From: Magallana gigas
Lineage: Eukaryota
NCBI RefSeq assembly: GCF_963853765.1
Contig: NC_088855.1
Span: 20,088,001 to 20,152,000, forward strand
Direction: 5' to 3'
Length of the DNA: 64,000 nucleotides
Part shown: positions 20,336 through 63,531 of the stretch, one piece after another
Numbering within the stretch: the stretch's first letter is position 1
Layout of the letters: every line of letters starts with the position of its first letter
The notes under the pieces: model-generated
Seen by the model: the letters and a program-made list of their open reading frames with translations, nothing else
The model's database searches: none
What the model was told of the DNA's origin: nothing
Program-made: the position numbers and the translations under genes

Positions 20336-20388
<53 letters not shown>

Positions 20389-35699: not shown

Positions 35700-36566
35700 A
35701 TGGGTTTCTTCTTGATTGCCGTTACCAGTCTTATTGCTGTAGCTAGCGCCGCCCCAACTTATGGCGGAGGTAAAATAAAAAGCAAATTATACATATATTT
35801 AAATAACTCAAAATAGTAAAATGTTCGATATATGCCTTTTTTTATTGTTCAAATTAATGCCCTTTGTTGTAGGAAATGCTAACAATGGCAATAACATGAA
35901 TATGCCAGCGAATTTGGGAATGAACAACGGAGCTATGAATGCAATGCCCGCTAATATGAATATGGCAACTAACATGGCTAACAACATGATGATGCCAGCA
36001 AATATGGGCAACAGCATGAATGCCAATGTAGCCAATATGATGAACGCCGTTAACATGGGCAACAACATGAACACGATGCCAGCTAACATGAATAATGCTG
36101 TAAACATGATGATGGCAGCTAATATGGGTAACAACAACAATGGAGCCAATATGGCAAATATGATGAACGCCATGAACATGATGCCAGCTAATATGGGCAA
36201 CAACAACAATGGAGCCAATATGGCAAATATGATGAACGCCGTGAACATGATGCAAGCTAATATGGGTAACAACAAAGGAGCAATGAACGCTATGATGCCA
36301 GCTAATATGGGCAACAATAACAATGGAGCCACAAATGCCAACATGGCAAATATGATGAACGCCGTAAACATGATGATGATGAATGGAGGAAACAATGGAG
36401 CTATGGGAAATGCAATGATGCCAAACAACATGGGACCTAATAACAACGCTGGTATGAATATGAAATGTAAGTAGACGTTTATATGATTTCAACATTGAAA
36501 TTGTTTACGCAATAAAATTAAGATGATAACTTGTTGATTTATTTTACAGCCTCCTATGTGGGGTAA
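35700..36566 (+). CDS. Secreted Met/Asn/Ala-rich protein MN1, 226 aa; exons 35700-35769, 35873-36466, 36550-36566
   Basis: Signal peptide MGFFLIAVTSLIAVASA-APTYGG. PANMGNN-type repeats, with about 53 Met in the 197 codons of exon 3 by hand count. Ends MNMK-SSYVG*. All junctions are phase 1; AATAAA near 36647. Confidence 0.85.
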
Positions 36567-37225
36567 ACACCTGCAGATATTTTGTACCGTTGAACAAAAG
36601 ACCCAGAGGAGCTCTGTTATACGCCTTATTTTCATTTTTCATGAATAATAAAATACATTGCTAAAACACATTGTCTATTGTATTTTGTATTTCTCATTTA
36701 TAATTGCTATCAAAAGCATGCATTGATTACGAATAAAACCCAGAATTTTAAGGAGGCAGACTTTTGTTTTCATTTTGCATGTTTTGTGCATTCTAGTAAA
36801 ATGCCGTGTATTTATACCTTTTATGATTTATTTTGATTCATGCTTCAGTAGGTGTGCTTTGCAATTGTACTTTTATGAAGTGATGATAAAATGATGCTTT
36901 GTAGGAGTATGTTTTAACAAATTACTTAAAAGTATGCCTATGAACTACTATACACAAAATAACGCTATCATCAGGGTTATTTTTTAATGTACAGTATTCA
37001 TGGTACCATGCAATCTGTATTTGTAACAATCCAAATATACAGCAAAATTCTGTGCATTTTTTTCTTATTATAGATGACCCCACTAGAACTAGACGGTATA
37101 GTTTAGGTTTTATTTTACATATAAAGTAGACAATAATATTACTAATCAAATATTACAATTTGAGGAAAATCGGTCTTGTTGTATTCGTTTAATCTGCTTC
37201 GAAGTGCGGAAAATGTCAATTAACT

Positions 37226-37838
37226 TTATTATACTTTCATGTTAAATACTGAAATCTGATTGGTTTAGACGCAGTTGATTATCCGTTCTATTACCCAATT
37301 GCAACTTCTCGGGCCTTTCCGGCAGGCTCGAAAAAACACCTCGAATGTATTAACATCACCGGATGTTTGAATTTTATACAAAATGGAGTCGCTTCCCATT
37401 AAAATAAGTATCGGCTAGACAGTCTTATTTGTCGCTTCTGTGATAAATTTTAGGGTATATCGTTTACTTTTATAAAGTATAGCTCACATCTAAACAGATC
37501 GTAAGAAGTGTTGTATTTATATCAAGTTTTATAAAAAGGGGGGTTGTCATGGACGCTTAGGTAATACATTCGAGGTGTTTTTCTGAGCCTGCCGGAAAGG
37601 CCCGAGAAGTTGCGATTGTTCTATTACCCTCAGCGTTAGCAATACACTTGGAAACGGGTAAGACAACGAATTGTTGCATGTGTGCGAGTAATTTATGCGC
37701 GTACGGTTTGCCATAGAATTCACGTCATTCCTTTATAAAAGCAGTTAAGTTTTCTTTAGAAAAAAGACATTTAGTATAATAAAATAAAAGTGCCTGTTTG
37801 GGAGGGTAAGAGTTGCCCTCCCAAACAGGCACTATTAA
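37226..37838. mobile_element. Non-autonomous DNA element with TTATTATACT/AGTATAATAA inverted ends and a terminal 18-bp perfect hairpin
   Basis: 10-bp inverted repeats at 37226 and 37773. AGTGCCTGTTTGGGAGGG / CCCTCCCAAACAGGCACT at 37789-37833. A partial copy lies at ~43427-43586. Family not assigned. Confidence 0.55.
37297..37617. mobile_element. 321-bp MITE with ~56-bp TIRs and a 10-12-bp target-site duplication, nested in the previous element
   Basis: AATTGCAACTTCTCGGGCCTTTCCGGCAGGCTC...GAATGTATTA mirrored at the right end. GTTCTATTACCC flanks both sides. The empty site is visible in the MN2 duplicate (~43484-43505). Confidence 0.88.
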
Positions 37839-39313
37839 ATATCATTGTAGTGAATGTAACCATATTTTTAGATGGCCCCTAAAAAGAGCAAGAGGTTGAT
37901 TTTCTTGAAACTTCGCAAAAAACTAAAGTTGGTGTAAATTATATATGTTTGAAAAGAAAGAGTAATGCTGTTGTAGATTTTACGCAATAAACCCAAATCG
38001 GTCTCCTCAGAAGAACGCAATTACTGTATCATGCGAGTTCTTGTTTTATCATTTTGGTATAATTTATAAAATTTTACAAGAAGAAATACACAAATGTACG
38101 TGTTGAATGGTTACATATAGGAAATATATGCAAGGACTTGTCCTTATAAAACCAGTCACTCAGATGACGTAGAGCCATGGGCTTTCGACCGTAGTTGTAC
38201 GTGTACTGTCTTGTCTCGAAATAACTATCTGAAACCACTTAATTAGCCAATCTTGGGTAAATGTGATGTGCTATATTTATTTATGAAACAGGTAGGATGT
38301 GAATGTCAATTTTAAAATATGTTATCCTAGAGCCAGTGGAGATTATATATTTGGTAAAAGCTGTGAAAATTGATGAAATCTTTAAACAATCGTATAATCT
38401 AATTCCTGAAAAAGTCAAAACATGGTGTACAAACAATCCAAAAAATATTAGATTTTAAATGCAAATATGTCGCCTTTTGTCGTACTTCAATCTTTTCTGT
38501 AAAAAATTATTACAACAAGCACGGAAAAAAAGTTCTTTGAAAATTAACAAACATTTCATCTTCGAACATATTTCATTCACAATTCATGAAAAATATACAT
38601 TAAAAGCTTTACTTTTACAACACGGTACTTTTCAACTGAATTATTCTTTTTGTTTACTTTTTCATTTTACTTCAATCATCCGCCTTAACCTGCGTAATGT
38701 GTAATTATGACGTCACATTGGGTCTTGATACACAGTGTAATATCAAACATTTATTACACGAATGGTATCTACCGTATATTGAGCTAAACATGTGAATAAG
38801 TCATAAAAGTTATACTTATAGGTACTATTTGATTAACACTTCTTTTTTTTACATGTAATGTTTGGAATTGTTGTTTTGACCGTTAAATCTGATTCAATTT
38901 TTCAAACCTTTTTCGATTGTAAATTTATTAACATTGATATATAAAAGTTATATTACATTGGTAATGCAATTTGCATTTACATGATTACCTTGAACATACG
39001 GTCAAATAATCCCCGACATGTTTTTCTAAAGCTATGCAATAATAATCTATGCGGTGTCTATGAATATCTCTAGTGTTTCAAAATCACATCTTATATGAAA
39101 ACTTTTAAATTTTGATAAAGTACTAGTAAGATGAACTTTTATCTTTGTGTCAAACCCTCGTCAAATTGTGTCAAGGAGTTACAGAGGTTTTGTATGCCAC
39201 ACCAAAAGCAGCGCTTTTCTGCTGTAAAAATAGAACACCGGAGACTTAACGTACATTCGTACATGATCTGATTGTAAAACATCAAACAACTTGAACACCC
39301 AGCAGATTTCGCC

Positions 39314-39439
39314 ACCGGAAAAAATACAAACTTTTCAAACTATATATAAAGCATGTTCGACTTATAAATCTTTGCAGATCTTCACTCCTCATACCTCCAG
39401 TGTTCTTTGTTGCCAAGTGTGTCATCTCCTTTGATCACT
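39314..39439 (+). promoter_or_regulatory. MN2 promoter and non-coding exon 1
   Basis: ACCGGAAA 39314, TATATAAA 39343, donor 39439/40. Confidence 0.65.
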
Positions 39440-39732
39440 GTAAGTATGCTTATAGCTATGAACGTTTTATGATTTACTTAATTTTCATAATGTTATCATT
39501 AGAAATATTTTGTTTGGTAAAATTGATCAAATTTTAAAGGATGTTCTATGAACAATTTCTTACAACATTCTAGCTATGCTCAAAAGGTTTCTTAATTTAC
39601 AATCAAATACAGTACATGTACAAAAAATAAAGAAAGAAAAAGAAAAAAGAGTTACGATAATCCACAACTTAGGCAAATAATTAACAGTGTTATAGTAGAT
39701 TTTATCCATTATCTTCAACGATGTTGTTTCAG

Positions 39733-40597
39733 ATGGATTTCTTCTTGATTGCCGTTACCAGTCTTATTGCTGTAGCAAGCGCCGCCCCAACTTATGGCGG
39801 AGGTAAAAAAAAAAGCAAATTATACATATATATAGATAACTCAAAATAGTAAAATTGTTCGACATATGCCCTTTTTTATTGTTCAAATTAATGTCCTTTG
39901 TTGTAGGAAGTGCTAACAATGGCAATAACATGAATATGCCAGCGAATATGGGAATGAACAACGGAGCTATGAATGCAATGCCCGCTTATATGAATATGGC
40001 AGCTAACATGGCCAACAACATGATGATGCCAGCAAATATGGGCAACAACATGAATGCCAATGTAGCCAATATGATGAACACCGTTAACATGGGCAACAAC
40101 ATGAACACGATGCCAGCTAACATGAATAATGCTGTAAACATGATGATGGCAGCTAATATGGGCAACAACAATGGAGCCAATATGCCAAATATGATGAACG
40201 CCATGAACATGATGCCAGCTAATATGGGCAACAACAACAATGGAGCCAATATGGCAAATATGATGAACGCCATTAACATGATGCCAGCTAATATTGGCAA
40301 CAACAAAGGAGCAATGAACGCTATGATGCCAGCTAATATGGGCAACAACAACAATGGGGCCACAAATGCCAACATGGCAAATATGATGAACGCCGTAAAC
40401 ATGATGATGATGAATGGAGGAAACAATGGAGCTATGGGAAATGCAATGATGCCAAACAACATGGGAACCAATAACAACGCTGGCATGAATATGAAATGTA
40501 AGTAGACGTTTATATGATTTCAACATTGAAATTGTTTACGCAATTAAATTCAGATGTTAACTTGTTGAGTTATTTTACAGCCTCCTATGTGGGATAA
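39733..40597 (+). CDS. Secreted Met/Asn/Ala-rich protein MN2, 225 aa; exons 39733-39802, 39907-40497, 40581-40597
   Basis: Near-identical to MN1: MDFFLIAVTSLIAVASA-APTYGG...MNMK-SSYVG*. Confidence 0.85.
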
Positions 40598-40791
40598 ACA
40601 CCTGCAGATATTTTGTACCGTTGAACAAAAGACCCCGAGGAGCTCTGTTATACTCCTTATTTTCATTCTTCATGAATAATAAAATACATTGCTAAAACAC
40701 ATTGTCTATTGTATTTTGTATTTCTCATTTTTAATAGTTATCAAAAGCATGCATTGATTACGAATAAAACCCAGAATTTTAAGGAGGCCAA

Positions 40792-45501: not shown

Positions 45502-45626
45502 ACCGGAAAAAATACAAACTTTCAAACTATATATAAAGCATGGCTACATCGAAATCTTTGCAGATCTTCTCTTCCCACATCTCCAGTATTCTCCGTTGCC
45601 AAAGCGTTTCATCTCCTTTGTTCACA
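45502..45626 (+). promoter_or_regulatory. MN3 promoter and non-coding exon 1
   Basis: ACCGGAAA 45502, TATATAAA 45530, donor CACA|GTAAGT 45626/7. Confidence 0.65.
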
Positions 45627-45739
45627 GTAAGTGTGGTTCAACCTCTTTTAAAAAATTTAAGGTGCGAAAATAATAGATAGAAATTTTCATCAAATTTTGA
45701 TCAATTTTTTTTAAAACTTAGGTATTAATTCCGGCTTTA

Positions 45740-45875
45740 NNNNNNNNNNNNNNNNNNNNNNNNNNNNNNNNNNNNNNNNNNNNNNNNNNNNNNNNNNNNN
45801 NNNNNNNNNNNNNNNNNNNNNNNNNNNNNNNNNNNNNNNNNNNNNNNNNNNNNNNNNNNNNNNNNNNNNNNNNNN
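45740..45875. other. Assembly gap (136 N) in MN3 intron 1
   Basis: Run of N characters. Confidence 1.
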
Positions 45876-45901
45876 ACAAATTTTCAACATTATTGTTTTA
45901 G

Positions 45902-46738
45902 ATGGGTTCCTTCTTGATTGCCATTACCAGTCTTATCGCTGTAGCAAGCGCCTTACCTTATGGCGGTGGTAAGTATTTTTGAAAATATCTAATTTTTTTT
46001 AAAGATAATTCAAAATAGTAAAATTGTTCGACATTTGCTTGCTTAAATTGTTCAACTGTAATGTCCTTTGTTGTAGGAAGTGCTAATAATGGCAATAAAA
46101 ACATCGGCATGAATTTGCCAGCAAATATGGGAATGAACAACGGAGCTATGAATGCAATGCCCGCTAATATGAATATGGCCGCCATGAATATGATGGCAGC
46201 TAACATGGCTAACAACATGATGATGCCAGCAAATATGGGCAACAACAAAGGCGCCATGAATGCCAAAGTAGCCAACATGATGAACGCCGTAAACATGGGC
46301 AACAACATGAACACAATGCCAGCTAACATGAATAATGCTGTGAACATGATGATGGCAGCTAATATGGGCAACAACAATAATGGAGCCAATATGGCAAATG
46401 TGATGAACGCCATGAACATGATGCCAGCTAATATGGGTAACAACAAAGGAGCAATGAACGTTATGATGCCAGCTAATATGGGCAACAACAACAATGGAGC
46501 CATGAATGCCAACATGGCAAATATGATGAACGCCGTAAACATGATGATGATCAATGGAGGAAATAATGGAGCTATGGGAAATGCAATGATGCCAAACAAC
46601 ATTGGACCCAATAACAACGCTGGCATGAATATGAAATGTAAGTTTCCTTTATATGAGTTTTGTAAATCAAAATTGTATATCAAAGTGAATAATATACATA
46701 TCATTCATTTTTTTACAGCCGCCTATAAGGCCTATTAA
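45902..46738 (+). CDS. Secreted Met/Asn/Ala-rich protein MN3, 215 aa; exons 45902-45968, 46077-46637, 46719-46738
   Basis: MGSFLIAITSLIAVASA-LPYGG...MNMK-SAYKAY*. Phase-1 junctions as in MN1. Confidence 0.85.
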
Positions 46739-47749
46739 ACACATGTGGATATTGTGCCAATAACAAACGTCCCGAGGAGCTCTGATTTACGCCTTATTTC
46801 ATATTTCATATTTAATAAAATGCATGGCTAACACATTATGCAGTTTCTTGTACTTTTTATGCCAACCATATCAATATTTTGTGATTGTTTTTTCATGAAA
46901 ACGCCAACTAAACATAAACAGCAACATATCGTAAACGTTTAGGAAGTTAAAGAATAAAGTACTTGAAAACAAATTATATTATTTGTTTTAGACAACTATT
47001 AAATTATGAACTAAAAATGAATATACATAAACGGGTATAAATAATGTGTGTTATGACCTGAATGCTGGTTTTATTGTTTTGATGTTGCTGTAACAATACT
47101 TACAAGGTTTAAACAAAATCATATATAATTGACAAAATATTATGTAATATCGCACCATCGTCTAATAACATTTTTAAGTTAAGATTTATTGTAAAAAAGT
47201 TTAAACCGCGATTGTTTACTTATTGTACTTATATCTAAAAGTATATTCAAACAATGAAGATTTCCTCAAAATGAACAGATATGATGCCTACTGCTTTGAA
47301 GGTTACAGTTACAAGATTGAGAGTCGCTTTCAAAGCATATGACTATCTAAGCAAAAGTAAATCATAATTTTTATTTGTTTTTTGTGTAACCGTTTGCAAA
47401 CTTAACTAAATTTTAAATCATGGTGGTTACTAGTGTAAAACATATGGTTAAGACTTTTTCTTTATTAATCGTATTCGTTGTTATAAGACAAAATTGACCC
47501 GTTTAAATCTACCAAACAAACAAAAATATTGTTTTTGACTAATTAAAGCCTACTGAAAACATTAAAAACAAAATAATATATGGCAATCAATTGAAATGTT
47601 TTGATTTTGTTCACGATGAACATGAAAAATAATGAAAAATGATGTATAATTTAGACTAAGCTTATAAAAAAAAAAAAAAAATGACAATAATAAAAAAATA
47701 AATGTAAACCTTATCTGCATAACTGACCTTTGGAAACTCTGTTAATTAC

Positions 47750-48225
47750 ATGTTATACTATAGCTCTTGAATTTGATTTCTTCAATCAATAAGCATATGT
47801 AGTCTGTCTCAAGATACATGTATTTATGCAGCACATTTGAACGAATTTTAATAAAAATACCAATACTTGTGGAAGAAGTGCTATTAAAATAGTTGAAAGA
47901 GATATTACCAAGATAATTTCATTGACACATTATCATTTTTCAGTCGGAAAAACTTACAGGAACAAGAACAGATTCCTTACGGAGATTTATAATGGACAGT
48001 GTTTACATCTTTTCTCCATTCGGAATACACTCGGAATACATCGCGCAATTTTTCAACGTTATCATCCGGGCTTGCTGCTATACAAAATCCCCGTAGACAT
48101 CACATTTTTTAGCACTGTATTGAAACCTGATAAGCTAACAGGGGCGTTTCGACTGAGAAATCTATCTTGAATACGTTTAAACCCTGAGGTATTTATAAAT
48201 ATCAAGCAATAGGACAGACTATAGT
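47750..48225 (-). repeat. Diverged inverted copy of P1 intron-2 sequence (~26765-27330)
   Basis: Shared blocks include GTCTACGGGGATTTT, GATGTAAACA..CCATTATAAAT.TCCGT.AG and AATCGTTCAAATGTGC.GCAT. The ORF track shows the same spurious peptide LTEIYNG.CLHLFS at both sites. Confidence 0.7.
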
Positions 48226-48329
48226 TTATCATAGATAAGATCAGATAAGATATTCTTTATTTTCTCCAAATTATTGGAGAGTATTACATAATCAAATTAT
48301 AAACTCAAGTGAAAATAGAGCAGAAACAA

Positions 48330-48870
48330 AACTTATTTATATATGTGACAAAATGTACATATTTTGATAGACATTTATAGATTACGGCAATCTATTACAA
48401 AGAAACCTCTGTTTTTATACAACATAAATGCAACGATTAACATAATCTGTTTCCATTTTGTATACGATATTTTTTCAAAACTTGTACCATTGACACATCC
48501 CATAAGGGATAAAAACTGTAATTCTAGATCTTGATTTTCAAACAGTATATATTCGTTGACATCAAGAAATTCTAAAACGTTTTCAAGCATAATTTCTCCG
48601 TCTTCTAAAAGATTATAACAGCTTCAAACAAGGTGCATATTATAGCTATCTGTTTCCTTATAACATAAAGGACAAGTTTTACATACAGTTTTCATTGATG
48701 AAACTTGTACTAAAAAGTTGATCAACAGTCGTTTTGAGGGTTCCTCTTTAGCAATTTGCCAAAGCTTATTAGGGTATTCTACTAAAAAAGGAAAGTTCAG
48801 GGTTATGCCAGAGCTATGCCATTGTTTTTCTTCCCCTGCCCAAATTGTTTTGATAACTAATTTATCATAT
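48330..48870 (-). mobile_element. Degenerate LINE C-terminal fragment
   Basis: The minus frame reads KLWQIAKE...CKTCPLCYKETDSYNMHLV*SC...LLE, resembling the Cys/His knuckle at the end of non-LTR ORF2. In-frame stop present. Confidence 0.45.
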
Positions 48871-49162
48871 AAAGTTTCTCATTTGAAATAATAATGAAAA
48901 ACATTTTTAATACAACCCGAAAGATTGTTAGTAAACACCAGTGTTGACACTCACATTAAAAAAAGTACGCACTTTAAATTTTTTTCTTAAAGTGCGTTGA
49001 ACATTGTCTTTTCAAAACTTAGTTAAGAAGATACATCAAAAGTTTTTGATATCGAGAAATTTAACGCACTTTGAAAAAATATGTAGCCTTCTAGAATTGG
49101 ATTGAATTCATTTGATAGTTACCTCTTAGGCTTATAAGAAAAAAATTGATCAAGAAAATGTT

Positions 49163-49240
49163 TACTGTATACACGGAAATATTTGCCCTGTTTTATTTTC
49201 ACCCTTTTCGCCCACGTTGTCAGCGGGCAAATTTGAGACT
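49163..49240. mobile_element. Truncated MITE end, same family as 18099-18310
   Basis: TACTGTATACACGGAAATATTTGCCCTGTTTTATTTTCACCC...GGGCAAATTT matches the reverse complement of the 18240-18310 end. Confidence 0.55.
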
Positions 49241-52007: not shown

Positions 52008-52126
52008 ATCAGAAAATATGAAGTTCGGAAACTATATATAAAGCTCGTTCGTATCAGAGTCTTTACAGACCTTTGCCTTTCGTTCCTCCAGTGTTCTTCG
52101 TTACCAAACGATTCATTATCTTTAAA
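52008..52126 (+). promoter_or_regulatory. MN4 promoter and non-coding exon 1
   Basis: TATATAAA at 52035, degenerate ATCAGAAA 27 bp upstream, CGGAAA abutting the TATA box, donor AAA|GTAAGT 52126/7. Confidence 0.6.
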
Positions 52127-52331
52127 GTAAGTACCTACGTATAGTTGAAAACAAAGTGACTCTTCTCAAATAATCTTTAATAATAGAAAGAGAAAAAAGT
52201 CCTGACATTTCATAATATCTCAAAGAACTAAAACAAAATTGAAAAACGGTTTTAAATAATTTGTTTATAGTTGTTATTTCAGATTTTTACAAGTTTTACA
52301 AATATTTGTAAGACTATCATTTCTATTTCAG

Positions 52332-53101
52332 ATGGGTTTCATTTTGATGACCGTTACTTGTCTTATTGCTTCAGCAAGTGCCTTTGCAACCTACGGGGGT
52401 AAATGTTTTAAAAGATGTTTCTATAATAACTGGATTAACAAAATTGTTCTATTTCGTTTATTTTATTTGATTTATCTAAAAACCCTATCTTTTAGGAAGA
52501 GCAATTAATGGCAACAACGCCAACATGAATGCCGCCATTAACACGGTGCCAGTCAATATGGGACTGAACACTGGAGCAATGAATGCACTGCCCGCTAATA
52601 TGAATATGGCCGCCATGAATATAATGGCAGCTAACATGGCTAACAACATGAACAGAATGCCAGTAAATATGGCCAACATCAATGGCGCCATGAACGTGAT
52701 GCCAAGTAATTTGGGAGTGAACATGGGCAACAACATGAACACAATGCCAGCTAATATGAATAATCTTGTGAACATGATGATGCCCACCAATAACAATGCC
52801 AATATGCTGAACAATTTGATACCAGTTAATTTGGGCAACAGAAACAATGTAGCCAGGAATGCCAATATGATGAACGCCGTGAACCTGATGTTGCAGAATG
52901 GTGGAAACAATGGAGTTTTGGGCAATGCAATGATGCCAAACAACATTGGAAATATGGGACCAAATACCAATGTTGGTATAAACATGAAATGTAGGTTACC
53001 TTTAATGCGATTTTCGTCATTCAAATTGTAATGGTGTACTCTACCCAAATCAAAATACTAATTTGCTGATTTACTTTACAGCCGCCTACGCAACCTATTA
53101 A
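52332..53101 (+). CDS. Secreted Met/Asn-rich protein MN4, 193 aa; exons 52332-52398, 52496-52990, 53082-53101
   Basis: MGFILMTVTCLIASASA-FATYGG-R...INMK-SAYATY*. The core is more Leu/Val/Ile-substituted than in MN1-3. Confidence 0.83.
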
Positions 53102-53785
53102 ACACAATCCAGATGTTTGTACCATCAACGAAAGACCCCGAGGAGCTCTGTCTTGTTCTTCATAGAAAATTAAATTGCATTCCAGAAACATTTTATATGT
53201 TGTGCTCTGTATTTTTTCTTGCTATTTAAAAGTAACTTGTATCGATAGTCTGCGATTCTTTTCTAGATAAAGCCAATTTATAGTAAGCAGCTATTAAGCG
53301 TAAAGGTATTGCATAACAATAATAAAACAATATGCTCAAACAAACAGCATTTATATTCGGAAAACGTTTTCGATTTTATCATGACACAAAGATCAAATGA
53401 ATACTACATTAAATTAACAAAATGTAGGTTTGACAGTAGCTGTTCTTTCTATTTGATGAAACGCTGATTTGATGGGGGGAAATGCTGAAGTTTATTACAA
53501 ATTCTAGGCAAGGAGTAAAATTTAGAAATCAAAATCAAGGACAACATAATGAAATAAAATTTAGATACTTGAACAAAAAAACTAATTGAACATTTTCCGC
53601 CAGATAGTTAAACTAAAATCCCACTTTTCCAAACATCTTTAAAAATCTTGAGTTTTGAAAATGGAGTCTTTTTACTGTTATTTAAGTACATGTTATAATT
53701 TTGAAATTTCTTTGCAAACCTACTTTTCGTTGTCTTTAAGATTTTTTTATGGTACAAGCCGATTGCCTTTTTAGGTATTAATATT

Positions 53786-54027
53786 CTATAATGATTTGGT
53801 GTAGAAAAATAATCAACACATTTACGACACATTTATTATTATTATTGACATTATAATTTTCATAAAATTCGAAGACAAAATCATATCTTAATTTATCGAA
53901 AAAAAACTATAATGATTTGGTATAGAAAAATAAACAACACATTTACGACACATTTATTATTATTATTGACATTATAATTTTCATAAAATTCGAAGACACA
54001 ATCATATCTTAATTTATCGAAAAAAAA
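53786..54027 (+). repeat. 121-bp direct tandem duplication
   Basis: CTATAATGATTTGGT.TAGAAAAATAA... occurs at 53786 and 53907. Confidence 0.9.
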
Positions 54028-56954
54028 TTATACACATGTATATAGTAATATTGTTTATCCTTATAATAAAAACATTATGACCTTGTTTACAAAAAAAAAA
54101 CTATTGCGGTAATTCACGATGCGGAAATCACTGGAAAATGGAAATAGAAAAAATCTTACTTAAGAATGTTTGTTGGTTTGACCACAAACCACTTGGGTTA
54201 ACCTACTTCGAATTTGATATGCATCGTTTACACATTAGTGAAATTATTCCTGATTATGCAAAACATTTTTGACAGATTATTTGCGTTACTTGTTCCAATA
54301 TGAATTTATATTAATACTGTTGATATTAAAATGAATATGTATATGATACGAAATAATAATTAACTTTTTTAAATGGAGATTTACCGCCATATTAATCTAA
54401 TTTAACAAAATAAAAAGGCGAAATTTATTATCGTTACATATAATGCAAATCATTGAATGAATTTTTTAAATTGTAATTAAAATTGAAATTGAAACTGACC
54501 ATAGGGACTTCTTTATCATGTTTGTAATGCACGAATTATTTAAACAATAATTTATGGAAAGTTTTTTTTTGGTAAAAATTTCTTTCACAAGCTCATGAGT
54601 CTAGGTATAGAGTTAAACCATCCTTATAATTTCTTTTAAGGATTCTTCTCACTTGTTTTGTAAAAGTAATTTGTTTTGTTTCGTAGGCAAATTACATTGT
54701 GAGGACAATTTACTCAAGAATACACAAAATAGTACCCTTTGAATAAAGAACTCTTTTCAAATGCAAAAGGGTCAATGTCGCGTTATAATGTGCAATTTGC
54801 CGTATTGTATTACTGAAAGCATGGGGGAGGGGTCCCAAAATAATCCCTTGCCCCTTATTTGTAATTTTGAGGTTGGATCAAAATGAAAGTGAAGCAAACA
54901 TATTCTAACTTAATATTTATGAGATAAACTTGCATATTGTTCCTTCCTACGTTTATTTCAAAAGTCTGTGCAGCTCCTCATGTTTGGGTTTCTGATTAAT
55001 ATGTCACTAACTAGATTCTTTTTAGGGTATTGTTACGCATATAATTATTCATGGGTACTGTATACGTTAAACTTGTCTTGTTAACGCTAGGGTTGTTATA
55101 ATACACTTTACGATATTTTTCTCATTAGTTGATAACGACAATTAAGAGGACTAGAGTGTCAGGACCATTTTTAGACTATTTAAATCTTATTGGAGAAAAG
55201 TGCTCTATATAAAGATAAAAGACAATAACCACGTTTTAGTTTATATAAATGAAATGTTTTTACTAAATATTAATATACAGCTAATCAATTTTTTTTAAAA
55301 TATGAAGTGAATCTGATAAATTTTTGTTGACATCCGATCCTACAAAAAAGAAATCAAATTAAATTTTTTTTTCATATTCTTATAAATTCACAAGAGTTTC
55401 TAAAATTTGATCCTATGTTAAAATATGAAACGTTGAGAAAAATGTTAGGAAAGGACTTTATACTGCACATTCAACTTTAACAGATACAGTTTATGGTGTT
55501 TTTGTTTTATTTTAAATATTAATTCGGTGGTGTTATGATTAATTTCAGATTGTTTATCATAGCATAGAACAACAATTTTAAGTTGTACTTGGGAATATTA
55601 ACTTGGTAGGTTGTGTGAATCAAATTTTATGATGCTTGAAGAACTTGATTTAATCACATACCAGCCAAGAAAGACAATTGAAAGATTGCTACACTATTCT
55701 GTTAATTAACTCGGGAGTAATGTTTGGACAGAACGTGTATAAAAAAATTACCAGCAGTATTCAAGATACAGAGATATTATATAGGTTAACCCATAAAGAC
55801 ATTGTAATGACTTACTTTAGAAGATTTAAGAGTGTTCAAATTATTAATTGACAATTTTTAAACAAAATAGTAAAACATGTATGGTCAATGATGATATAAA
55901 GCGTTTAAAAATTTGTCCTGTATAGTTATTAGACAAAACATGAATCAGAGCTTAGGAAACTATTAGAAAAATAATGAGAACATTTTACACTTTACAATTG
56001 TAAAAAAGATAACATTCATCCCCTCTTAAGTGAAAACCCTAAATAGACTAAACCAATTTTTGTAAAGACCTTCTTACTCATCCAACGCATGACTTATATG
56101 TACGTTGCCTAACAGTTATCAAGAAGGAGAGAAGATTATGGAAAAAAAATTAATCCACAAAAGGTGATGTAACTTATGACCTCCCTGCAGTAAAATTCTC
56201 TACTCCAGAAGTCATGAAAAAATATGGTGAAAGGCTTCACGTTCTTTCTAACTATGCAGAAAGTTTCTATTCAGTGTTACTAAAAGAAAAGAAGAAGGTT
56301 TATAAACATCATATACGCTACTACAATATGATCATTTCTGTCACGCCCTGCAGTGAGAACACTATCCGACGTCATATTATCTACAATTTAAGCAGAATGA
56401 TTTATTGTCGTTTTAAAAACGCAAGACAACAACGGACAATCACAAATTGCAAAAGGTCACCAAAGAGACTCAATCAAGCCACCTTAAAACAAAATAAATG
56501 TTTATTTGTAAATCATGCAACATACAGATTAAGAAATGTTTTTCTTTCGAGTAATTTTTAAAATCAAAATTAATCATTAGTTTATCATCAGATAATTATG
56601 ACAAACCTAAAACATTAAATTAAACCGCATTATAAATAAACGTTTAAGCATTTTATATAACACGTTACTCATAAAAAGATACGCTTAATAATTGAGGACA
56701 CTTAGAATTCATTTGCTTTTTGAAACATTTTACCATTGATTTCTCAATAAGAAACTTATTGTACGTAGACAGGATGCGAATATACAAGAGAATTTACAAT
56801 GTACATTATACAGAAATTTAACAAGACCGACAGGACTAACAGATCGAATTCAGACTTCCCTGTGGTAAAAACAAAATTTCAGACCACATACATACGATTT
56901 AACATGACCAAGATGTTCGTCATCAAAGATTTTGATCACTCTGCAGAAATTGTG

Positions 56955-57071
56955 ATTAGAAAAATAATTTTCTAAACTATATATAAAGCATGGTCTTATC
57001 AAAAACTTCACAGTCCTTTGTATTTCGTTTTCTCTGTGAGCTACGTTGCCAAGCATTAAATTATCTTTAAA
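56955..57071 (+). promoter_or_regulatory. MN5 promoter and non-coding exon 1
   Basis: TATATAAA 56980. Upstream block TTTTGATCACTCTGCAGAA shared with MN4. Donor AAA|GTAAGT 57071/2. Confidence 0.6.
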
Positions 57072-57195
57072 GTAAGTACCTACCTATGGAGGTATTAAAT
57101 ATTTTGAATTTAGCACAAGAATTAAGTAGTAGAAACATAATGTTTTGTTGCATATATCTTCTCCTTTCGTTATATTTGAAAGGTTTTTGTTTCAG

Positions 57196-57942
57196 ATGGG
57201 TTTCTTTTTGATGGCCGTTACTTGTCTTATTGCAACAGCAAGCGCCTTTCCAACATATGGCAGTGGTAAATGTTTTTAAAAGAATATATCTACAAATATA
57301 ATGTACGAACTACTAAAATTCTTCCATATTTGAATTTATTTCAATTTTTTTTTAAGGAAGAGCAAATAATGGCAATAATGGCAACAACAATGCAGCCATT
57401 AACATGCTGCCTGTGAATATGGGACTAAACACTGGAGCAGTGAATACAATGCCCGCTAATATGAATGTAGCCGCCGTGAATATGATGGCGACTAACATGG
57501 GCAACAACTTGGCAATGCCAGGTAATATGGGCCTGAACAACAATGGCGCTTTGAACATCATGCCAGGAACTATGGGTATAAATATGATGCCAGCCAATAT
57601 CGGCATCAACATGAACAATATACCAGCTAACAGGTATAATGCTGTAAACATGATGCTAGCAGCTAATATGGGCAACAACAACAATGGAGCCATTAATGCC
57701 AATATGATGAACGCTGCGAACATGATGATGGTGAATGGCGTAAATAATGGAGCTATGGGCAATATAATGACCCCAAACAACATTGGAAATATAATGGGAC
57801 TAAATACCAATGCTGGTATGAATATGAAATGTAAGTTAGCTTGAATACAAATATTTTGAAAACTCTAATGGATTATAGACGTTTAAAAATACTAACATGA
57901 AGTGTTTTTGTTTATTTTACAGCCGCCTATGCAACCTATTAA
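57196..57942 (+). CDS. Secreted Met/Asn-rich protein MN5, 187 aa; exons 57196-57265, 57357-57830, 57923-57942
   Basis: MGFFLMAVTCLIATASA-FPTYGSG-R...MNMK-SAYATY*. Confidence 0.83.
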
Positions 57943-60900
57943 ACACAATGCAGAGGTTTGTACCATCAACGAAAGACCCCGAAGAGCTCGGTTTTATTCT
58001 TCATAGATAATAAAAATACATGGCAATATTATATACTGTTTTGTTTTCCTATTATTTAAATATTGATTTCTTACAAGTTCTTTTTTCATGAGAACACTTA
58101 CAATTTAGCGTGCCTTTTGACATACTTATATATTGGATTTTATTTGATGTATAAGACAATGTGGACAATATATTCAAATCCATTATTTGTAGTATGGTAA
58201 AGAATTAATAATGATTCGAAATAAACTTGATAAACAGCAAAGATGTTTTTAACTTTGCAAGTGTCGCTGTGCGTCTAATCTTAGCATAGATTTACGATAT
58301 TATTAGAATATTTATTGCTGAGTGACATGCAATTTCTTATAAACATTATCTTAAATTTCATATTTCCAAATAAGTTTTTGATATAATTTCCAAAAGTTTA
58401 TGACAATAATATTTATTTATAGAAGGACAAGGGGGGAAAGTTCACGGTCGTTTATTTTTTTAAATCAAAGTACTCAAAGTCCTGGAAAGCACTAAGCCAG
58501 CCTTATTGCTTCTTTTTCAAATGTTAATTGTTAATATTTTTAACTCATAATTATACAGAAAGTATAAACAAAATTTCATGAAAATGCATGATATGTATGA
58601 GACCCTGACCATACCTTTTCGATCAATTTGAAGAGAGGAGTTTGTAATGCATATTAACTGATCAGTCAGCCCACGGACCGATTAATTAGGTTTTGATAAC
58701 CGAATTGTGCTTTGTAATTTGATTGTGCTTGTGTACATTGGAATTCTGGAAAGGAATAAGACAGTCCGTGTTAACGAAATTCGAAGTTATGAAACCGATT
58801 GTCACTGGGTTCCGGAGTCCGCATATATATATTTCTCGAATTTGAATTTGAGGATATATCTTGACAGTTGTTTGAAATTCAGAGAGCGAACTTTGCAAAG
58901 TTAAGAGTCTAATAAATAAATAGGTGTTCAGTCATACATTGCACCGCTGCAAGCCTGTTTCTTATCCTACAGTCATAAAAGTAAAGTGTACAAACTCAAA
59001 TATACACCCGCATAATAGTATTGTTCCGGAAACTATATATCTTGTATATTTATAGAGTATTCGCTTTTGATCAAAATTAATATTCTGCTGGCTGACTTTA
59101 TTACTTTTTTTAAAAGCTAACATTGTTATTTATATATATATTTAATATAAATAAAGTGAACGGCAAGTTTTGAATACACTTAAAAAAAAAGACTGACCGT
59201 ACCTTTTCACCAATTAAGACCATAAAATCTGACTAAATGTCATTGAATTAAAAAATTCACAAAATGCAAGAGAAAAACACGACATGAATCAATAGATCAA
59301 AGTTACACAACAAATATTTTAAAAATATCATGTTAATAAATTTGTCGGCCTTTGAGGGTCTCAAATTTTGTCAATGTAAACTTTTGATATAGCGACAAGA
59401 CAAGGAAATATCTCTGATCGCATGCTTTGACACTCCGAGATCAGCACCACTGACCATCCTTTGTTTACATCGCACAGCGGTCATCCAACATGTGTCTAAT
59501 ATTAGCAGCATGGAATGCTTTGTGGCATGTTTAGTTGTGTAATCGGCAATGCACCCTCAGATTTCACTAATATTGTGAAAGTTTGCAATTTTTTCTGATC
59601 TTGACTAAATAAACCCACAACTCTACGTTCTTTTTGCAAAACGTGGAATCTAAATACTAACTTAGGGATTACCACGATTACCATGATCTTGCTTTTTTTA
59701 GAATACGAGCGGTCGGTCAGCATGATCACTATGTGGCGCTTATAAAAAGATCATGAGATTGGTGCATCCCTAATAAGCGCTAGCGCATGCGCTGGATAAA
59801 AAACATCTAAAAGTACATTTTTCATTAATTTGCAAAGTATTGGTTTGTGCCAACTTCAATTAGGGCTTTATGACAATTCGAAAATTCTATCCCGTGTTTA
59901 CTTTCTTTATTTAAATGCATTTTTAAAATATTGGCGGAATGAGGTATTAAAGGTGTTTTTTTAAATAATTTGTTCTAAATATTTTGTACAAAGGCAGAAG
60001 GTTTTTATTGAATCACAAATCATGTAAAGTAATAAAAGATAGATTTATATCCCAACTGCTTTATGTATAAATGTGTTTCAACTTTAGACCTGTACTTTAG
60101 ATTTAGCAATGCTATTTAACGTAGATTGTGTAATATTGATTTGTCTTTGGGAGTCCAACATTTTTTGTGCACCGTAAAGTGCAACTACTTGATAGAATCT
60201 GAACTGTAGCTCCAAGGACGTCCACCCGATTTTTTGCAGACCAGAGCAACAGACCAGCAGCTGAAACTTATTCTTAAAATAAAATTCTTCATTTTTTCAG
60301 TTCCAAGCATTTAAAAAAAATTTGGATAATGCAAAATATATCGGTTATCACGTATCTTCAAAGTGTTTAAATTTATATGGTTTAGCTACAAGAATGTATT
60401 CATCATATAAGTCAAAAGCAAAGATCAATATCAGTCTGTTTTTATTTTTTAAAAAATAAGATATCTAATTGTTGATAAATCGTCATATGAGTCATACAAA
60501 TTTACTAACTTGAACAGGATGTGAATGTTAAATCTGGATTGCCATTTGTATTGTAGACAGGAAACCATATCTAGTATCGTATTGTTTACATATTTAACAT
60601 GTAATAACATTATAAAACTCATCTTATGGTAGATTTTCAACATAGCAACGATTTATAAATTTTAAAATTCTTCAGCTTACTTTTTATATATAAAACGAAT
60701 TACATGTATTGTTGATTCAACATGCATTAGCTAAGAACCATTAACAGACTCTAATTCAAGTTATGACTTAACCCATTTAATCGTCATTTTAATATACAAC
60801 ATATTCAATGAAGTTCAATGAAGTTTTAAGCCTTTGCAATACATCGTAAGTCCTTTTCAAATAAAAAAAGAACATATTATGCAGCAATAGTTTTTTGAAA

Positions 60901-61522
60901 TTTACTTTCCTTCCATGTTTGTGAAATTGTGTTGTAAAAATAATATACACTGTAATAATAAATGCCTGGAATCGACTAAAGCATGTTTTCTATATTTAAC
61001 TCAGCTTAATTCAATATAAGTAGTTAAAATCTAATAAGCAAGAACATGACATTTTTGTCGCAAGTTACAATAATATTAGGGAGTGTTTATACTCTGAAAT
61101 GTTTCACATTGATGCTTTAAAAATAAATACATCAGAATATTTCTTCCTTGTGTGTAGGTTTTTGTATGCTTCATCAAAGTTATATATATATATATATATA
61201 TGATTTAAGTTTGAAAAAAATTAAAAACAAACTACATCAAAATATTATTATATCACTATGAAGCATTTCTTGCTATTTTGATAATACATAGATTCTGTTG
61301 TGACGGAATTGTTCTTTAAGCTTCTTCTAGAGGGCGAGAAAAGTATAGAAAAAGCACACATTTTAAATGATGTCAATGTGCATCATGAACAGTAGAAAAC
61401 CTTGTCCCAGACCAAGAAGAACTATCCTGTCATCAAAATAGAACACGTCTGAGTCAAAACATAAATTCTTACAAGGTTCAGGTGTAAAACATCAGACGTT
61501 ATCATCGGCTGACGAATCTGTA

Positions 61523-61647
61523 ACCGGAAAGTAATAATGTATTATACAACTATATAAACCCAAGTTTCGTTCTGAATCCTCACAACTTTATTTGTCATCC
61601 TCCGGAGTTCTTCGCTGTTCCAACGTTCTCTAGTTCCTTTGTTCATG
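61523..61647 (+). promoter_or_regulatory. MN6 promoter and exon 1
   Basis: TGAGTCA (~61460), ACCGGAAA 61523, TATATAAA 61551, donor ATG|GTAAGT 61647/8. This terminal ATG is in frame with exon 2. Confidence 0.62.
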
Positions 61648-62311
61648 GTAAGTAGAACTTAAGTGGACTGTATGGTCGTGGTCATTTTTACACTATACTA
61701 ATTTCCTTAACAAGAAGACTTCTGTATAAAAATATATAAAAATATTCAAATTTCAAAAGATAAAATATATGGTATTTTTCCTTATTGAATTAAAGCTTAT
61801 AGCTAAATACATCATATCTATAAAAAAAAGAGTTAAGAAAGATGTGATGGTTGATTTGTTGACAACCAAGCCCCCTTTATAGTTGAAAAAGATTTTCAAA
61901 GATCACACAACGTTGGCGATAAAGTCGTTTAGTATAATTCTTTAAAGCTGTAATAAATGATTTGTAGACATTTGTAAAATATGTACTTTGAGATTTTTTG
62001 TCTCTCTTGCTGATTATCTTACATCTTAGAATACTTTTATTTAAGAAGAAATATTTCTGAAGTTTAATAGTTTTCTTTTCGAGTTTTGTAAATTTGTCAT
62101 ATATGAAAGGAATACAAATCTTTCGAAGACACTTAATTTTGAAACATCGTTGTGTTTATGAATTTGTCATGTTTTGAAGGAAGACAAACACATATAAGAC
62201 ACTTTATTTTCAAACATTCAATCTTTGCTATTTTGAAAAAAAAGTGTCAGATTATTTTTTTCAAAGTTTATTTGACGTACTAATGAACTCTGCAATAATT
62301 CCTTGTTTTAG

Positions 62312-63531
62312 ATGGGTTCCTTCATTGTTGCTGTTTCATGCCTTTTTGCTGTCATTAGCGCTCGTCCCCAATATGGAAAAGGTAAATTTAAACATTTATT
62401 TTACTCTTATTAGAACTTTGATTAAAAAAATTGTTTAATAATTTTTTCCCTGTAAAATGAAGATAAAATCAAAGAGACAATTTTAATTTTTCTCTTTAAG
62501 GTGGTAATGTAGGCATGTCTAACATGATGATGAACATGATGCCAGCTAACATGGGCATGAACATGATGCCAGCTAACATGGGCATGAACATGATGCCAGC
62601 TAACATGGGCATGAACATGATCCCAGCTAACATGAACATGATCCCAGCTAACATGAACATGATCCCAGCTAACATGAACATGATCCCAGCTAACAGGGGC
62701 ATGAATATGGTGCCAGCTAACATGGGAATGAACATGATGCCAGCCAACATGGGAATGAACATGAAGAATGGAGCAATGAACATGATGATGCCAGCTAATA
62801 TGGGAATGAACATGATGCCAGCTGATATTGAAATGAGCATGCCAGCAGGTATGGGTAATAACAAAGGAGCAAATAACATGATGCCAATTGATATGGAAAT
62901 GAGCATGCCAGCCGGTATGGGTAACAACAAAGGAGCAAATAACATGATGCCAATAGATATGGAAATGAGCATGCCAGCTAATATGGGTAACGGAGCAAAT
63001 AACATGCCAATGAAGGTGGAAATGGACATGCCAGCTGCTAATGGTAATAACATGGGAGCAAATAACATGATGCCAATAGATATGGAAATGAGCATGCCGG
63101 CTGGTAATGGTAACAACAAAGGAGCAATGAACACCATGATGCCAGCTAATATGGGCATGAACATGATGCCAGCTAATATGGGCATGAACATGATGATGCC
63201 AGCTAATATGGGCAACATGATGATGCCAGCTAATATGGGCAACATGATGATGCCAGCTAATATGGGCAACATGATGAACAGAGCTATGAACATGATGATG
63301 ATGCCAATGAATATGGGTATGATGAATGGTGGAAACAATGGCGGTATGCCCAATGCTATGATGGGAAACATGATGGGAGCTGGTAACAACAAAATGAAAT
63401 GTAAGTACATAGGTCATATGTCTGTACAACTGCAAAAATTTAAATAAAATGATTTTTTGCGAGTACGTGTAAAAGAAAGTATTTTCCTATGTATATTGAT
63501 GTCTTGTTTTATCATTACAGCTCTCTATTAA
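62312..63531 (+). CDS. Secreted Met/Asn/Pro-rich protein MN6, 326 aa; exons 62312-62381, 62501-63400, 63521-63531
   Basis: MGSFIVAVSCLFAVISA-RPQYGKG; MMPANMGMN, MIPANMN and MMPIDMEMSMPAGMGNNKGANN repeats; ends NKMK-SLY*. AATAAA at ~63609. Confidence 0.85.

What the first reader, a model, noticed from the sequence alone, without database searches (positions are those of the whole stretch)
35700..63531. Tyrosines placed at both chain ends by the two small exons (telechelic cross-linking design)
Seen: each mature MN N-terminus carries a Tyr (PTYGG, PTYGG, LPYGG, ATYGG, PTYGS, PQYGK). Each C-terminus is MK followed by SSYVG, SSYVG, SAYKAY, SAYATY, SAYATY or SLY. The 160-300-aa cores are Tyr-free apart from one Tyr each in MN2 and MN5. 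MGP starts GVYG and P1 ends RRY. Established: Tyr/DOPA-Lys and dityrosine cross-links harden or network molluscan and arthropod matrices. Inference: end-linked flexible chains would form a rubber-like network with defined strand length.
Basis: partly seen in the sequence, partly recalled or inferred. Interest (0 to 1): 0.72.

Follow-up and report, generated by a model that had tools for sequence, protein, structure and literature searches.

The report
Tyrosine-capped methionine-rich oyster matrix proteins
Six neighbouring oyster genes encode secreted, almost uncharged methionine/asparagine-rich proteins whose only tyrosines sit within a few residues of each chain end, the layout long suspected to cross-link bivalve hinge-ligament "rubber" proteins, though cross-linking itself is untested here.

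Summary
Six + strand genes (MN1-6) share one structure: a 5'UTR exon, a coding exon that starts at the ATG (17-aa signal peptide plus x-x-Y-G), one Met/Asn/Ala/Gly-rich core exon, and a tiny last exon (S-x-Y...). All coding introns are GT..AG and phase 1. RNA reads confirm every coding joint of MN4 and MN5.

Of 17 tyrosines in 1,270 mature residues, 15 lie within six residues of an end. The two core tyrosines are single-base Asn-to-Tyr changes, and the MN5 one reads Asn in other individuals. The assembly gap lies in MN3's 5'UTR intron and touches no coding sequence.

The same ends flank quite different Met-rich cores in neighbouring genes (MGP, MG7, an M/S/T-rich pair). They persist in Saccostrea (MGP N-end Tyr, P1 C-end Tyr). 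Published Pinctada ligament proteins show the layout too, and reviews already speculate that abductin is cross-linked through tyrosines at its extremities.

The MN family has no Pfam domain and no detectable homologue outside Crassostrea.

Verdict: a new, lineage-restricted variant of Met-rich bivalve matrix or ligament proteins. End-group cross-linking is plausible but unproven. Tissue, modification and network geometry remain open, and two ends that only pair cannot make a network.

The parts
35700..35769 (+). MN1 first coding exon: signal peptide plus APTYGG; Tyr codon 35760-35762. A 5'UTR exon lies upstream (TATA about 35317, donor at 35414).
35873..36466 (+). MN1 core exon, Asn/Met/Ala/Gly-rich and Tyr-free; ends ..NMK with phase-1 donor GTAAGT.
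36550..36566 (+). MN1 last coding exon, (S)SYVG plus stop; Tyr codon 36555-36557; poly(A) signal at 36647.
39733..40597 (+). MN2 CDS: exons 39733-39802, 39907-40497, 40581-40597. End Tyr at 39793 and 40586. Core Tyr at 39987 (Asn in the paralogues).
45740..45875 (.). Assembly gap inside MN3's 5'UTR intron. MN3's promoter and 5'UTR exon (about 45530-45626) lie to its left. The acceptor of the ATG exon lies 26 nt to its right.
45902..46738 (+). MN3 CDS: exons 45902-45968 (..LPYGG), 46077-46637, 46719-46738 ((S)AYKAY plus stop). A 34-mer of its core occurs inside an RNA-library contig.
52332..53101 (+). MN4 CDS: exons 52332-52398 (..FATYGG, Tyr as TAC), 52496-52990, 53082-53101 ((S)AYATY plus stop). 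The 5'UTR exon ends at 52126.
   Evidence: Both coding joints are seen in RNA.
57008..57071 (+). MN5 5'UTR exon; approximate start about 30 nt after the TATA-like box at 56980. Its donor joins to 57196.
   Evidence: The joint 57071|57196 is seen in three RNA runs.
57196..57942 (+). MN5 CDS: exons 57196-57265 (..FPTYGS), 57357-57830, 57923-57942 ((S)AYATY plus stop). The core Tyr at 57635-57637 is polymorphic (Asn in other individuals).
62312..63531 (+). MN6 CDS: exons 62312-62381 (..RPQYGK), 62501-63400 (Met-richest core, 33% Met, with acidic DxEMSMP repeats), 63521-63531 ((S)LY plus stop).
29766..32733 (-). MGP, an 830-aa Met/Gly/Pro-rich neighbour with the same end architecture. Exons: 32733-32664 (signal peptide plus GVYG), core 32419-30020, mini-exon 29895-29881 (GSMMR), tail 29773-29766 (LW plus stop).
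   Evidence: Saccostrea orthologue.
27442..28503 (+). P1: core exon 27442-28056, then a tiny last exon from 28496 encoding (R)Y plus stop. It matches C. gigas LOC105335585, which ends ..SPRRY.

Best explanation
MN1-6 are a tandem, lineage-restricted family of secreted structural matrix proteins of an oyster (Crassostrea gigas or a very close relative).

Each mature chain is 170-309 aa. It is a low-complexity, nearly uncharged spacer of about 30% Asn (21% in MN6), 16-33% Met, Ala, Gly and Pro. It has no Cys, Trp or His, and its only Phe is the first residue of mature MN4 and MN5. Two short conserved end modules, encoded apart from the body of the core, cap it. The N-end is x-x-Y-G, directly after signal-peptide cleavage. 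The C-end is M-K | S-x-Y(-x-x-Y).

The genes belong to a larger cluster of more than 100 kb. In it the same end exons are attached to different Met-rich spacers. Most likely this is the oyster counterpart of the Met-rich hinge-ligament or insoluble-matrix proteins of other bivalves (abductin, Pinctada LMP).

Proposed mechanism (inferred, not shown): after secretion, a tyrosinase or peroxidase oxidises the terminal Tyr. These then couple to each other or to the adjacent invariant Lys or the alpha-amine (dityrosine, di-DOPA, quinone-Lys or methylene-bistyrosine type links). This ties chains mainly through their ends into an insoluble, compliant network. The Tyr-free spacer is left chemically inert, apart from reversible Met oxidation.

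Shown: gene structures, splicing, transcription, secretion signal, composition, Tyr positions, and their conservation.
Inferred: tissue (ligament or mantle), any modification, and network formation.
For: Gene models and Tyr positions.

RNA: splice joints, strand and high depth in RNA libraries. MN3 sequence occurs in an RNA contig.

Conservation within the family: the end Tyr, the following Gly and the preceding K-S are invariant in 6 of 6 copies while neighbouring end residues vary. These copies have diverged to dS 0.5-1.1. Synonymous TAT/TAC changes occur at three of the end Tyr codons, counting MG7.

Core tyrosines: both are derived from Asn, and one is polymorphic.

Same ends on other cores:
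- MG7: RGYGPG ... MSMK|SSYM.
- M/S/T-rich gene in L009: Tyr only at mature positions 7, 8, 257, 260 and 261 of 261.
- MGP: Tyr 3, Tyr 794 and C-terminal Trp 810 of 810.
- P1: ends RRY.

Across genera: Saccostrea MGP keeps ..SAYG|, its tail reads YW plus stop, and the P1 orthologue keeps (R)Y plus stop.

Literature:
- Pinctada ligament LMP has Tyr only at ..VYS-YGPR.. and ..PYNLYQG around a Tyr-free (MMMKPD)n core. The ligament protein pfu_66071 has an M/N-rich C-terminal region ending ..ASIY (PMC7591529 supplement).
- Abductin: Tyr 'at the extremities' is speculated to form dityrosine and the cross-links are still unknown (PMC9999432). Tyr 20, right after the signal peptide, is linked to methylene-bistyrosine (PMC13052691).

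Orphan status: no Pfam domain and no homologue outside the species in 5.8e9 or 1.84e9 proteins. This fits a fast-evolving structural low-complexity family.
Against: No chemical evidence exists for any modification, and no tissue information (run metadata are coded).

The termini are not more conserved than the cores overall. Given the background constraint (dN/dS about 0.25), keeping two Tyr in six copies is only mildly surprising, roughly P 0.1 by my estimate.

The absence of Tyr from the cores is not specific. His, Trp, Cys and (except in MN6) Asp and Glu are absent too, so it may simply reflect the narrow repeat alphabet.

Lys is also present mid-chain in MN1-3 and MN6.

MGP of this genome ends LW, not Y. 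P1 has no N-end Tyr. The gene in L008 ends in Phe and has an internal Tyr.

A Lys or Arg follows shortly after the N-end Tyr in MN4, MN5, MN6 and MGP. Proteolytic removal of the N-end peptide therefore cannot be excluded.

MN orthologues from other genera could not be obtained.
Confidence: 0.45

Rival explanations
1. The proteins are structural, but the network is held by something other than tyrosine. Candidates are Met-Lys sulfilimine bonds, Met-sulfoxide-dependent interactions, or non-covalent Asn 'polar zipper' (amyloid-like) or helical packing. On this view the terminal Tyr are passengers of two exons conserved for biosynthetic reasons: signal-peptidase context at the N-end, and protection or export context at the C-end.
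For: Met is 16-33% of residues. An invariant Met-Lys pair precedes the tail exon in 6 of 6 copies. Sulfilimine Met-Lys links have been proposed for abductin and for Pinctada Met-rich proteins. About 30% Asn is typical of prion-like, self-assembling sequences (established knowledge). The cores are under purifying selection and are more conserved than the end exons between MN1 and MN3. AlphaFold suggests helical segments rather than a coil, at low confidence.
Against: It does not explain why Tyr specifically is invariant while its neighbours change. It does not explain why Tyr reappears at the ends of unrelated cores (L009 gene, LMP, pfu_66071), or why it survives between genera. MN4 and MN5 have only one Lys, too few for a Lys-limited network.
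Confidence: 0.25
2. The terminal Tyr are non-covalent 'stickers'. The few aromatic residues on an otherwise aliphatic/amide spacer would drive coacervation, or anchor chain ends to chitin, aragonite fibres or partner matrix proteins. No covalent cross-link would be involved.
For: All aromatic residues of the mature chains sit at the ends. MGP ends in Trp and the L008 gene in Phe, so aromaticity rather than Tyr chemistry may be what is kept. Aromatic stickers drive phase separation in other extracellular disordered proteins (e.g. PMC6884462, listed; abstract only read).
Against: One or two aromatic residues per 200-aa chain make very weak stickers. Bivalve ligament proteins are notoriously insoluble and covalently cross-linked (PMC7591529). 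Tyr, not Phe or Trp, is kept in all six MN genes, MG7 and the L009 gene.
Confidence: 0.2
3. The proteins are not a structural matrix. They could be, for example, a secreted Met-rich oxidant sink or a storage or other soluble protein, with no mechanical meaning to the Tyr positions.
For: No tissue or localisation data were obtained. A high Met content can scavenge oxidants (general knowledge).
Against: The genes are clustered with many other secreted low-complexity Met-rich genes. They resemble proteins identified by proteomics in Pinctada ligament. Word depth is very high in some RNA libraries. There is no enzymatic or binding domain.
Confidence: 0.05

Closest known systems
Abductin (Argopecten irradians hinge-ligament elastomer; Cao, Wang & Bayley 1997, as summarised in PMC9999432 and PMC13052691)
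   Same: It is a small secreted protein with a Met-rich low-complexity core, very few Lys, and tyrosines at the extremities (one directly after the roughly 19-aa signal peptide). Its cross-links are unknown, with end-Tyr coupling and Met-Lys sulfilimine both speculated. The neighbour gene MG7 (MGGNMMP repeats) comes closest in composition.
   Different: Abductin is about 58-60% Gly, contains Phe, and has a GGFGGMGGGX decapeptide. MN cores are about 30% Asn and 11% Gly, lack Phe, and have no such repeat.
Pinctada fucata LMP (ligament methionine-rich protein) and ligament protein pfu_aug1.0_1662.1_66071 (PMC7591529, supplementary Fig. S3)
   Same: LMP has a signal peptide followed at once by Y-G, a Tyr-free Met-rich repeat core, and two Tyr in the last six residues. 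pfu_66071 has a Met/Asn-rich C-terminal region ending ..ASIY, close in composition and ending to MN (..MK-SLY..SAYATY). Both are proteomically proven insoluble ligament components.
   Different: The LMP core is charged (MMMKPD repeats) whereas MN is almost uncharged. pfu_66071 carries a long Tyr- and Trp-containing N-terminal Gly/Asn/Ser region. No detectable sequence similarity was returned by the database searches. The exon structure in Pinctada was not examined.
Shematrin / KRMP-type shell framework proteins of pearl oysters (recalled from memory: Gly-rich cores and basic C-termini ending in Tyr such as RKKKY; not checked here)
   Same: They are secreted low-complexity framework proteins with a basic-plus-Tyr C-terminus. 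Compare P1 (..RRY), the L009 gene (..SKYY) and MN (..MK-S-x-Y).
   Different: Shematrins have many Tyr inside their Gly-rich repeats, whereas MN cores are Tyr-free. This is a lead from memory only.
Resilin and elastin (reference elastomers)
   Same: They are disordered, cross-linked extracellular networks. Resilin uses dityrosine (PMC9999432).
   Different: Resilin's Tyr are spread through its repeats, and elastin uses dedicated Lys/Ala cross-linking domains along the chain. Neither restricts its cross-link residues to the two chain ends.

Membership tests
Abductin | Secreted: N-terminal signal peptide of about 19 aa | tested here: met
   A 17-aa hydrophobic leader with A-x-A before the predicted cleavage site is present in all six genes. 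No dedicated signal-peptide predictor was available.
Abductin | Gly/Met-rich core built of GGFGGMGGGX decapeptides (about 58% Gly, with Phe) | tested here: not met
   MN cores have 29-34% Asn (21% in MN6), 16-33% Met, 9-12% Gly, no Phe and no such decapeptide. Only the neighbour MG7 is Met/Gly-rich (36% and 29%), and its repeat unit is different, MGGNMMP.
Abductin | Conserved Tyr at the extremities of the mature chain | tested here: met
   Tyr lies at mature position 3-4 and within the last 0-3 residues in 6 of 6 genes. The abductin feature is taken from PMC9999432 and PMC13052691.
Abductin | Detectable sequence homology to scallop abductin | not tested
   No abductin sequence was returned by any tool. 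Searches with MN and MG7 cores found nothing outside the species.
Abductin | Located in the inner hinge ligament (resilium) | not testable with these tools
   Run and tissue metadata are coded. No paper on the oyster proteins was found.
Pinctada LMP-like ligament Met-rich proteins | Signal peptide, then Y-G; a Met-rich Tyr-free repeat core; a Tyr-bearing C-terminal tail | tested here: met
   MN1-6 and MG7 show all three elements. The LMP sequence was read in the PMC7591529 supplement.
Pinctada LMP-like ligament Met-rich proteins | MMMKPD-type charged repeat, or sequence homology | tested here: not met
   MN1-5 cores have no Asp or Glu and few Lys. No cross-species hits were found.
Tyr-cross-linked matrix proteins (functional class) | Presence of DOPA, dityrosine, Tyr-Lys or methylene-bistyrosine on the protein | not testable with these tools
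   This requires mass spectrometry or amino-acid analysis of native material.

The most novel reading that the evidence does not exclude
The locus is a natural kit of end-functionalised ('telechelic') protein macromers. A shared pair of mini-exons supplies the reactive Tyr (plus Lys) end groups. Evolution swaps and expands the inert spacer between them (Asn/Met, Gly/Met, Pro/Met, Ser/Thr/Met; 120-810 aa). Co-secreted chains of different length and chemistry would then be end-linked into one network whose mechanics are set by the expressed mix. This would be an exon-level modular design not described for any natural elastomer, and it could settle the unresolved question of abductin and ligament cross-linking.
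Probability: 0.25. Interest if true: 0.8.

Novelty: new variant of a known kind. Interest (0 to 1): 0.5.

Why it matters
The cross-link chemistry of bivalve hinge-ligament elastomers (abductin and relatives) has been open since the 1960s. One reason is that the native material is insoluble and the known proteins are few.

MN1 and MN2 offer an unusually clean test case. The mature chains carry only two (MN2: three) tyrosines and two lysines, all at known positions, in an otherwise chemically quiet polymer. Mapping cross-links by mass spectrometry and testing Y-to-F or K-to-R recombinant proteins would therefore be straightforward to read.

The locus also shows how a family of structural proteins can keep short end modules while its low-complexity spacers diverge beyond recognition. 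This is relevant to annotating orphan genes in molluscs. It also gives sequence templates for end-linked protein hydrogels.

Tried and rejected
Searches for homologues:
- MN1 core against 5.8e9 proteins found only one same-species Logan fragment.
- A profile of the six cores against 1.84e9 representatives found only two same-species fragments.
- The MG7 core found nothing.
- Pfam found nothing.

Own-genome searches: the MN family and its tail-exon and 3'UTR motifs occur only at this locus. The weak MN6-core hits on contigs C1 and C5 turned out to be unrelated Tyr-rich tandem repeats.

Literature searches found nothing on these oyster proteins. I tried peptide motifs, C. gigas LOC identifiers, oyster ligament proteomes and mantle-isthmus transcriptomes.

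Reaching an MN orthologue in Saccostrea by walking from the P1 orthologue failed. The fetched 21-kb locus ends 3.3 kb past MGP and holds no MN-like exon. A second P1 relative (P0008) had no contig on record.

Single-sequence AlphaFold of the MN1 core gave mean pLDDT 54 with helical segments. That is too weak to decide between coil and helix, so I made no fold search.

I considered and rejected the idea that the termini are more strongly conserved than the cores; they are not. I also rejected reading the Tyr-free cores as specific selection against Tyr, because several other residue types are equally absent.

Polymorphism comparison: there are 12 non-synonymous variants in the cores and none in the end peptides, where about one would be expected. 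This has no statistical power.

Full report
**What is in the sequence.**
The window is AT-rich eukaryotic DNA. It corresponds to G000:C3:20088001-20152000 of a 564-Mb oyster genome. The neighbouring gene P1 is 95% identical to C. gigas LOC105335585, so the source is C. gigas or a very close relative.

Between 35.3 and 63.7 kb lie six + strand genes, MN1-6, with one shared architecture:
- a TATA-like box and a short 5'UTR exon;
- a coding exon that begins exactly at the ATG and encodes a 17-aa signal peptide plus x-x-Y-G;
- a phase-1 intron of 91-119 nt;
- one core exon of 474-900 nt;
- a second phase-1 intron of 81-120 nt;
- a last exon with only 8-17 coding bases (S-x-Y...), followed by a 3'UTR and a poly(A) signal about 70-80 nt on.

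All coding introns are GT..AG.

**RNA evidence.**
I laid four RNA libraries, one of raw stranded polyA reads, on 52250-58150. They confirm all four coding joints of MN4 and MN5, the + strand, and an extra 5'UTR joint at 57071|57196. Word depth in some libraries is in the thousands. A 34-base stretch inside one chimeric RNA contig is an exact match to the MN3 core. MN1, 2, 3 and 6 are modelled by homology.

**The assembly gap.**
The gap at 45740-45875 was tested first, as asked. Its left flank carries MN3's TATA box and 5'UTR exon, colinear with MN1 and MN2. Its right flank is the acceptor 26 nt before MN3's ATG exon. It therefore sits in the 5'UTR intron and no reading frame crosses it. I did not try to fill it.

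**The observation.**
The predicted mature N-ends are APTYGG, APTYGG, LPYGG, FATYGG, FPTYGS and RPQYGK. The C-ends are ..MK followed by SSYVG, SSYVG, SAYKAY, SAYATY, SAYATY and SLY.

Of 17 Tyr in 1,270 mature residues, 15 lie within six residues of an end. The two core Tyr (MN2, MN5) sit where all paralogues have Asn, a single AAT-to-TAT change. The MN5 one reads Asn in 10 of 10 raw reads of another sample, in an RNA contig, and in the Logan contig L001. L001 is 96% identical to MN5 including introns, and it keeps the end Tyr while its neighbour changes from Thr to Arg.

The mature chains are remarkable in other ways too. MN1 and MN2 have no Asp, Glu, Arg, His, Cys, Phe or Trp, and only two Lys.

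**Is it more than chance?**
Treated as independent, the placement is overwhelmingly non-random (P about 2e-17). The six genes are paralogues, however, so the real question is retention.

Pairwise synonymous divergence reaches 0.5-1.1 between the MN1-3, MN4/5 and MN6 lineages. Over that span both end Tyr stay invariant, as do the Gly after the first and the Lys-Ser before the second. Flanking end residues vary, and the Tyr codons themselves show TAT/TAC synonymous changes.

Against neutrality that retention is significant. Against the family's general constraint (dN/dS 0.2-0.56) it is only mildly so. The end exons as a whole are not better conserved than the cores: for MN1 versus MN3 the core is 95% identical, exon 1 is 88% and the tail 71%.

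**The stronger evidence comes from outside the six genes.**
The same end modules flank unrelated spacers in the same locus:
- MGP (- strand, 810 mature aa, Met/Gly/Pro-rich) starts GVYG at a phase-1 exon end. It has a GSMMR mini-exon and a tiny LW-stop tail.
- MG7, 6 kb beyond the window (Met/Gly-rich, MGGNMMP repeats), reads RGYGPG ... GMSMK | SSYM-stop.
- An M/S/T-rich gene about 27 kb further (locus L009) has Tyr only at mature positions 7, 8, 257, 260 and 261 of 261. Its tandem paralogue in L010 ends identically.
- P1 ends in a tiny exon encoding (R)Y-stop, as the C. gigas RefSeq protein also does.

In Saccostrea cucullata, the MGP orthologue keeps ..SAYG at the exon end although the neighbouring residues differ. 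Its tail reads YW-stop, and the P1 orthologue (47% identity) keeps the (R)Y-stop exon.

In Pinctada fucata, two proteins identified by proteomics in the insoluble ligament show the same layout (PMC7591529 supplement). LMP has a signal peptide, then YG, a Tyr-free (MMMKPD)n core, and a ..PYNLYQG end. pfu_66071 has a Met/Asn-rich C-terminal region ending ..ASIY.

**What it most likely is and how it may work.**
These are secreted, fast-evolving structural matrix proteins. They have no Pfam domain and no homologue outside the species in two very large protein searches. They belong to a cluster of more than 100 kb of Met-rich genes.

The closest functional relatives are the Met-rich ligament proteins: abductin and LMP. 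Reviews state that abductin's cross-links are still unknown. They also note that dityrosine between the Tyr 'located at the extremities' and Met-Lys sulfilimine are the current speculations (PMC9999432; PMC13052691).

My best reading (confidence 0.45) is that the end Tyr, helped by the adjacent invariant Lys and the alpha-amine, are oxidative cross-linking handles, and that the spacer is deliberately inert.

Two ends that only dimerise extend chains but do not gel. A network needs junction functionality of three or more. The second C-end Tyr of MN3-5, the K-S-x-Y pairing, or trimeric Tyr products could supply it.

'Defined strand length' is also loose, because chains range from 170 to 309 aa and some cores carry Lys. 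Whether the spacer is a random coil is open. Single-sequence AlphaFold gives pLDDT 54 with helices between Pro/Gly breaks.

**Rivals.**
- The network is made by Met/Lys or Asn-zipper chemistry, and the Tyr are passengers of processing-constrained exons (0.25).
- The Tyr are non-covalent aromatic stickers or anchors, which fits the Trp and Phe ends of MGP and the L008 gene (0.2).
- The proteins are not structural at all (0.05).

**Limits.**
No tissue information was available because run metadata are coded. No chemistry is possible with these tools. No MN orthologue from another genus was found: the Saccostrea locus I could fetch ends 3.3 kb beyond MGP. No abductin sequence was available for a direct comparison.

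**Verdict.**
The gene family and the exon-level modularity appear undescribed, so I class this as a new variant of a known kind, with interest 0.5.

The scan's first readers had already flagged this stretch and the next window as a Met-rich 'ligament/shell biomaterial' cluster. I used those notes only as leads.

Noticed in passing
window 36597-36614, 40628-40645, 46765-46782, 53131-53148, 57972-57989 (weaker in MN6, about 63570): An 18-nt 3'UTR motif, AAAGACCCCGAGGAGCTC, lies about 30-45 nt after the stop codon of every MN gene. It stays nearly invariant while the rest of the UTR diverges to 50-70% identity. At one mismatch or fewer it occurs nowhere else in the 564-Mb genome. It may be a family-specific regulatory or localisation element.
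   Followed up: partly
L003 5659-6406 (G000:C3:20157659-20158406), just past the window's end: A seventh gene (MG7) has the same end exons but a Met/Gly-rich MGGNMMP-repeat core. It is the most abductin-like member of the locus. Its ..GMSMK is a separate 15-nt mini-exon, as in MGP, whereas in MN1-6 it is fused to the core exon.
   Followed up: partly
L008 6531-6947 (+), L009 5172-6132 (-), L010 824-1609 (-), i.e. G000:C3:20.168-20.184 Mb: The Met-rich cluster continues for at least 30 kb downstream. It holds a Met/Pro-rich gene and a tandem pair of Met/Ser/Thr-rich genes that start IPKSIKYY and end KFGYSKYY.
   Followed up: partly
window 32419-32405 (MGP, - strand) versus L011 about 17590: The RRR site directly after MGP's N-end GVYG is not conserved in Saccostrea, which has QGRNQ. 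This argues against a conserved convertase cleavage there.
   Followed up: partly
window 11748-17653 and 18646-21894 (+): Two tandem copies of a multi-exon gene have ORF pieces that resemble proline dehydrogenase (e.g. ..GVTFGAKLVRGAYIYKERALA..). This was recognised by eye only.
   Followed up: no
window 4433-5227 (-): A single 264-aa ORF has a BTB/KCTD-like N-terminus (..ITLNVGGRIFATRLSTL..). It was not analysed.
   Followed up: no
window 52593-52990 and 57588-57692 (tables 5, 5c, 7): Logan RNA contigs jump between MN4, MN5 and MN3 core sequences (for example joint 52758 to 57660 with an MN3 34-mer in between). These are assembly chimeras among near-identical repeats, not trans-splicing. Paralogue-specific expression cannot be read from such contigs.
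   Followed up: partly
L011 11230-11560 (Saccostrea cucullata, GCA_032062105.1): The public protein model of the P1 orthologue (LOC134254493) reads through the last donor and ends ..SSKYRASIYYDYCI. A GTAAGT donor and a downstream cag|GGTATTAA exon, conserved with Crassostrea, would instead give ..QRS-RY-stop, so the annotation is probably wrong at its 3' end.
   Followed up: partly
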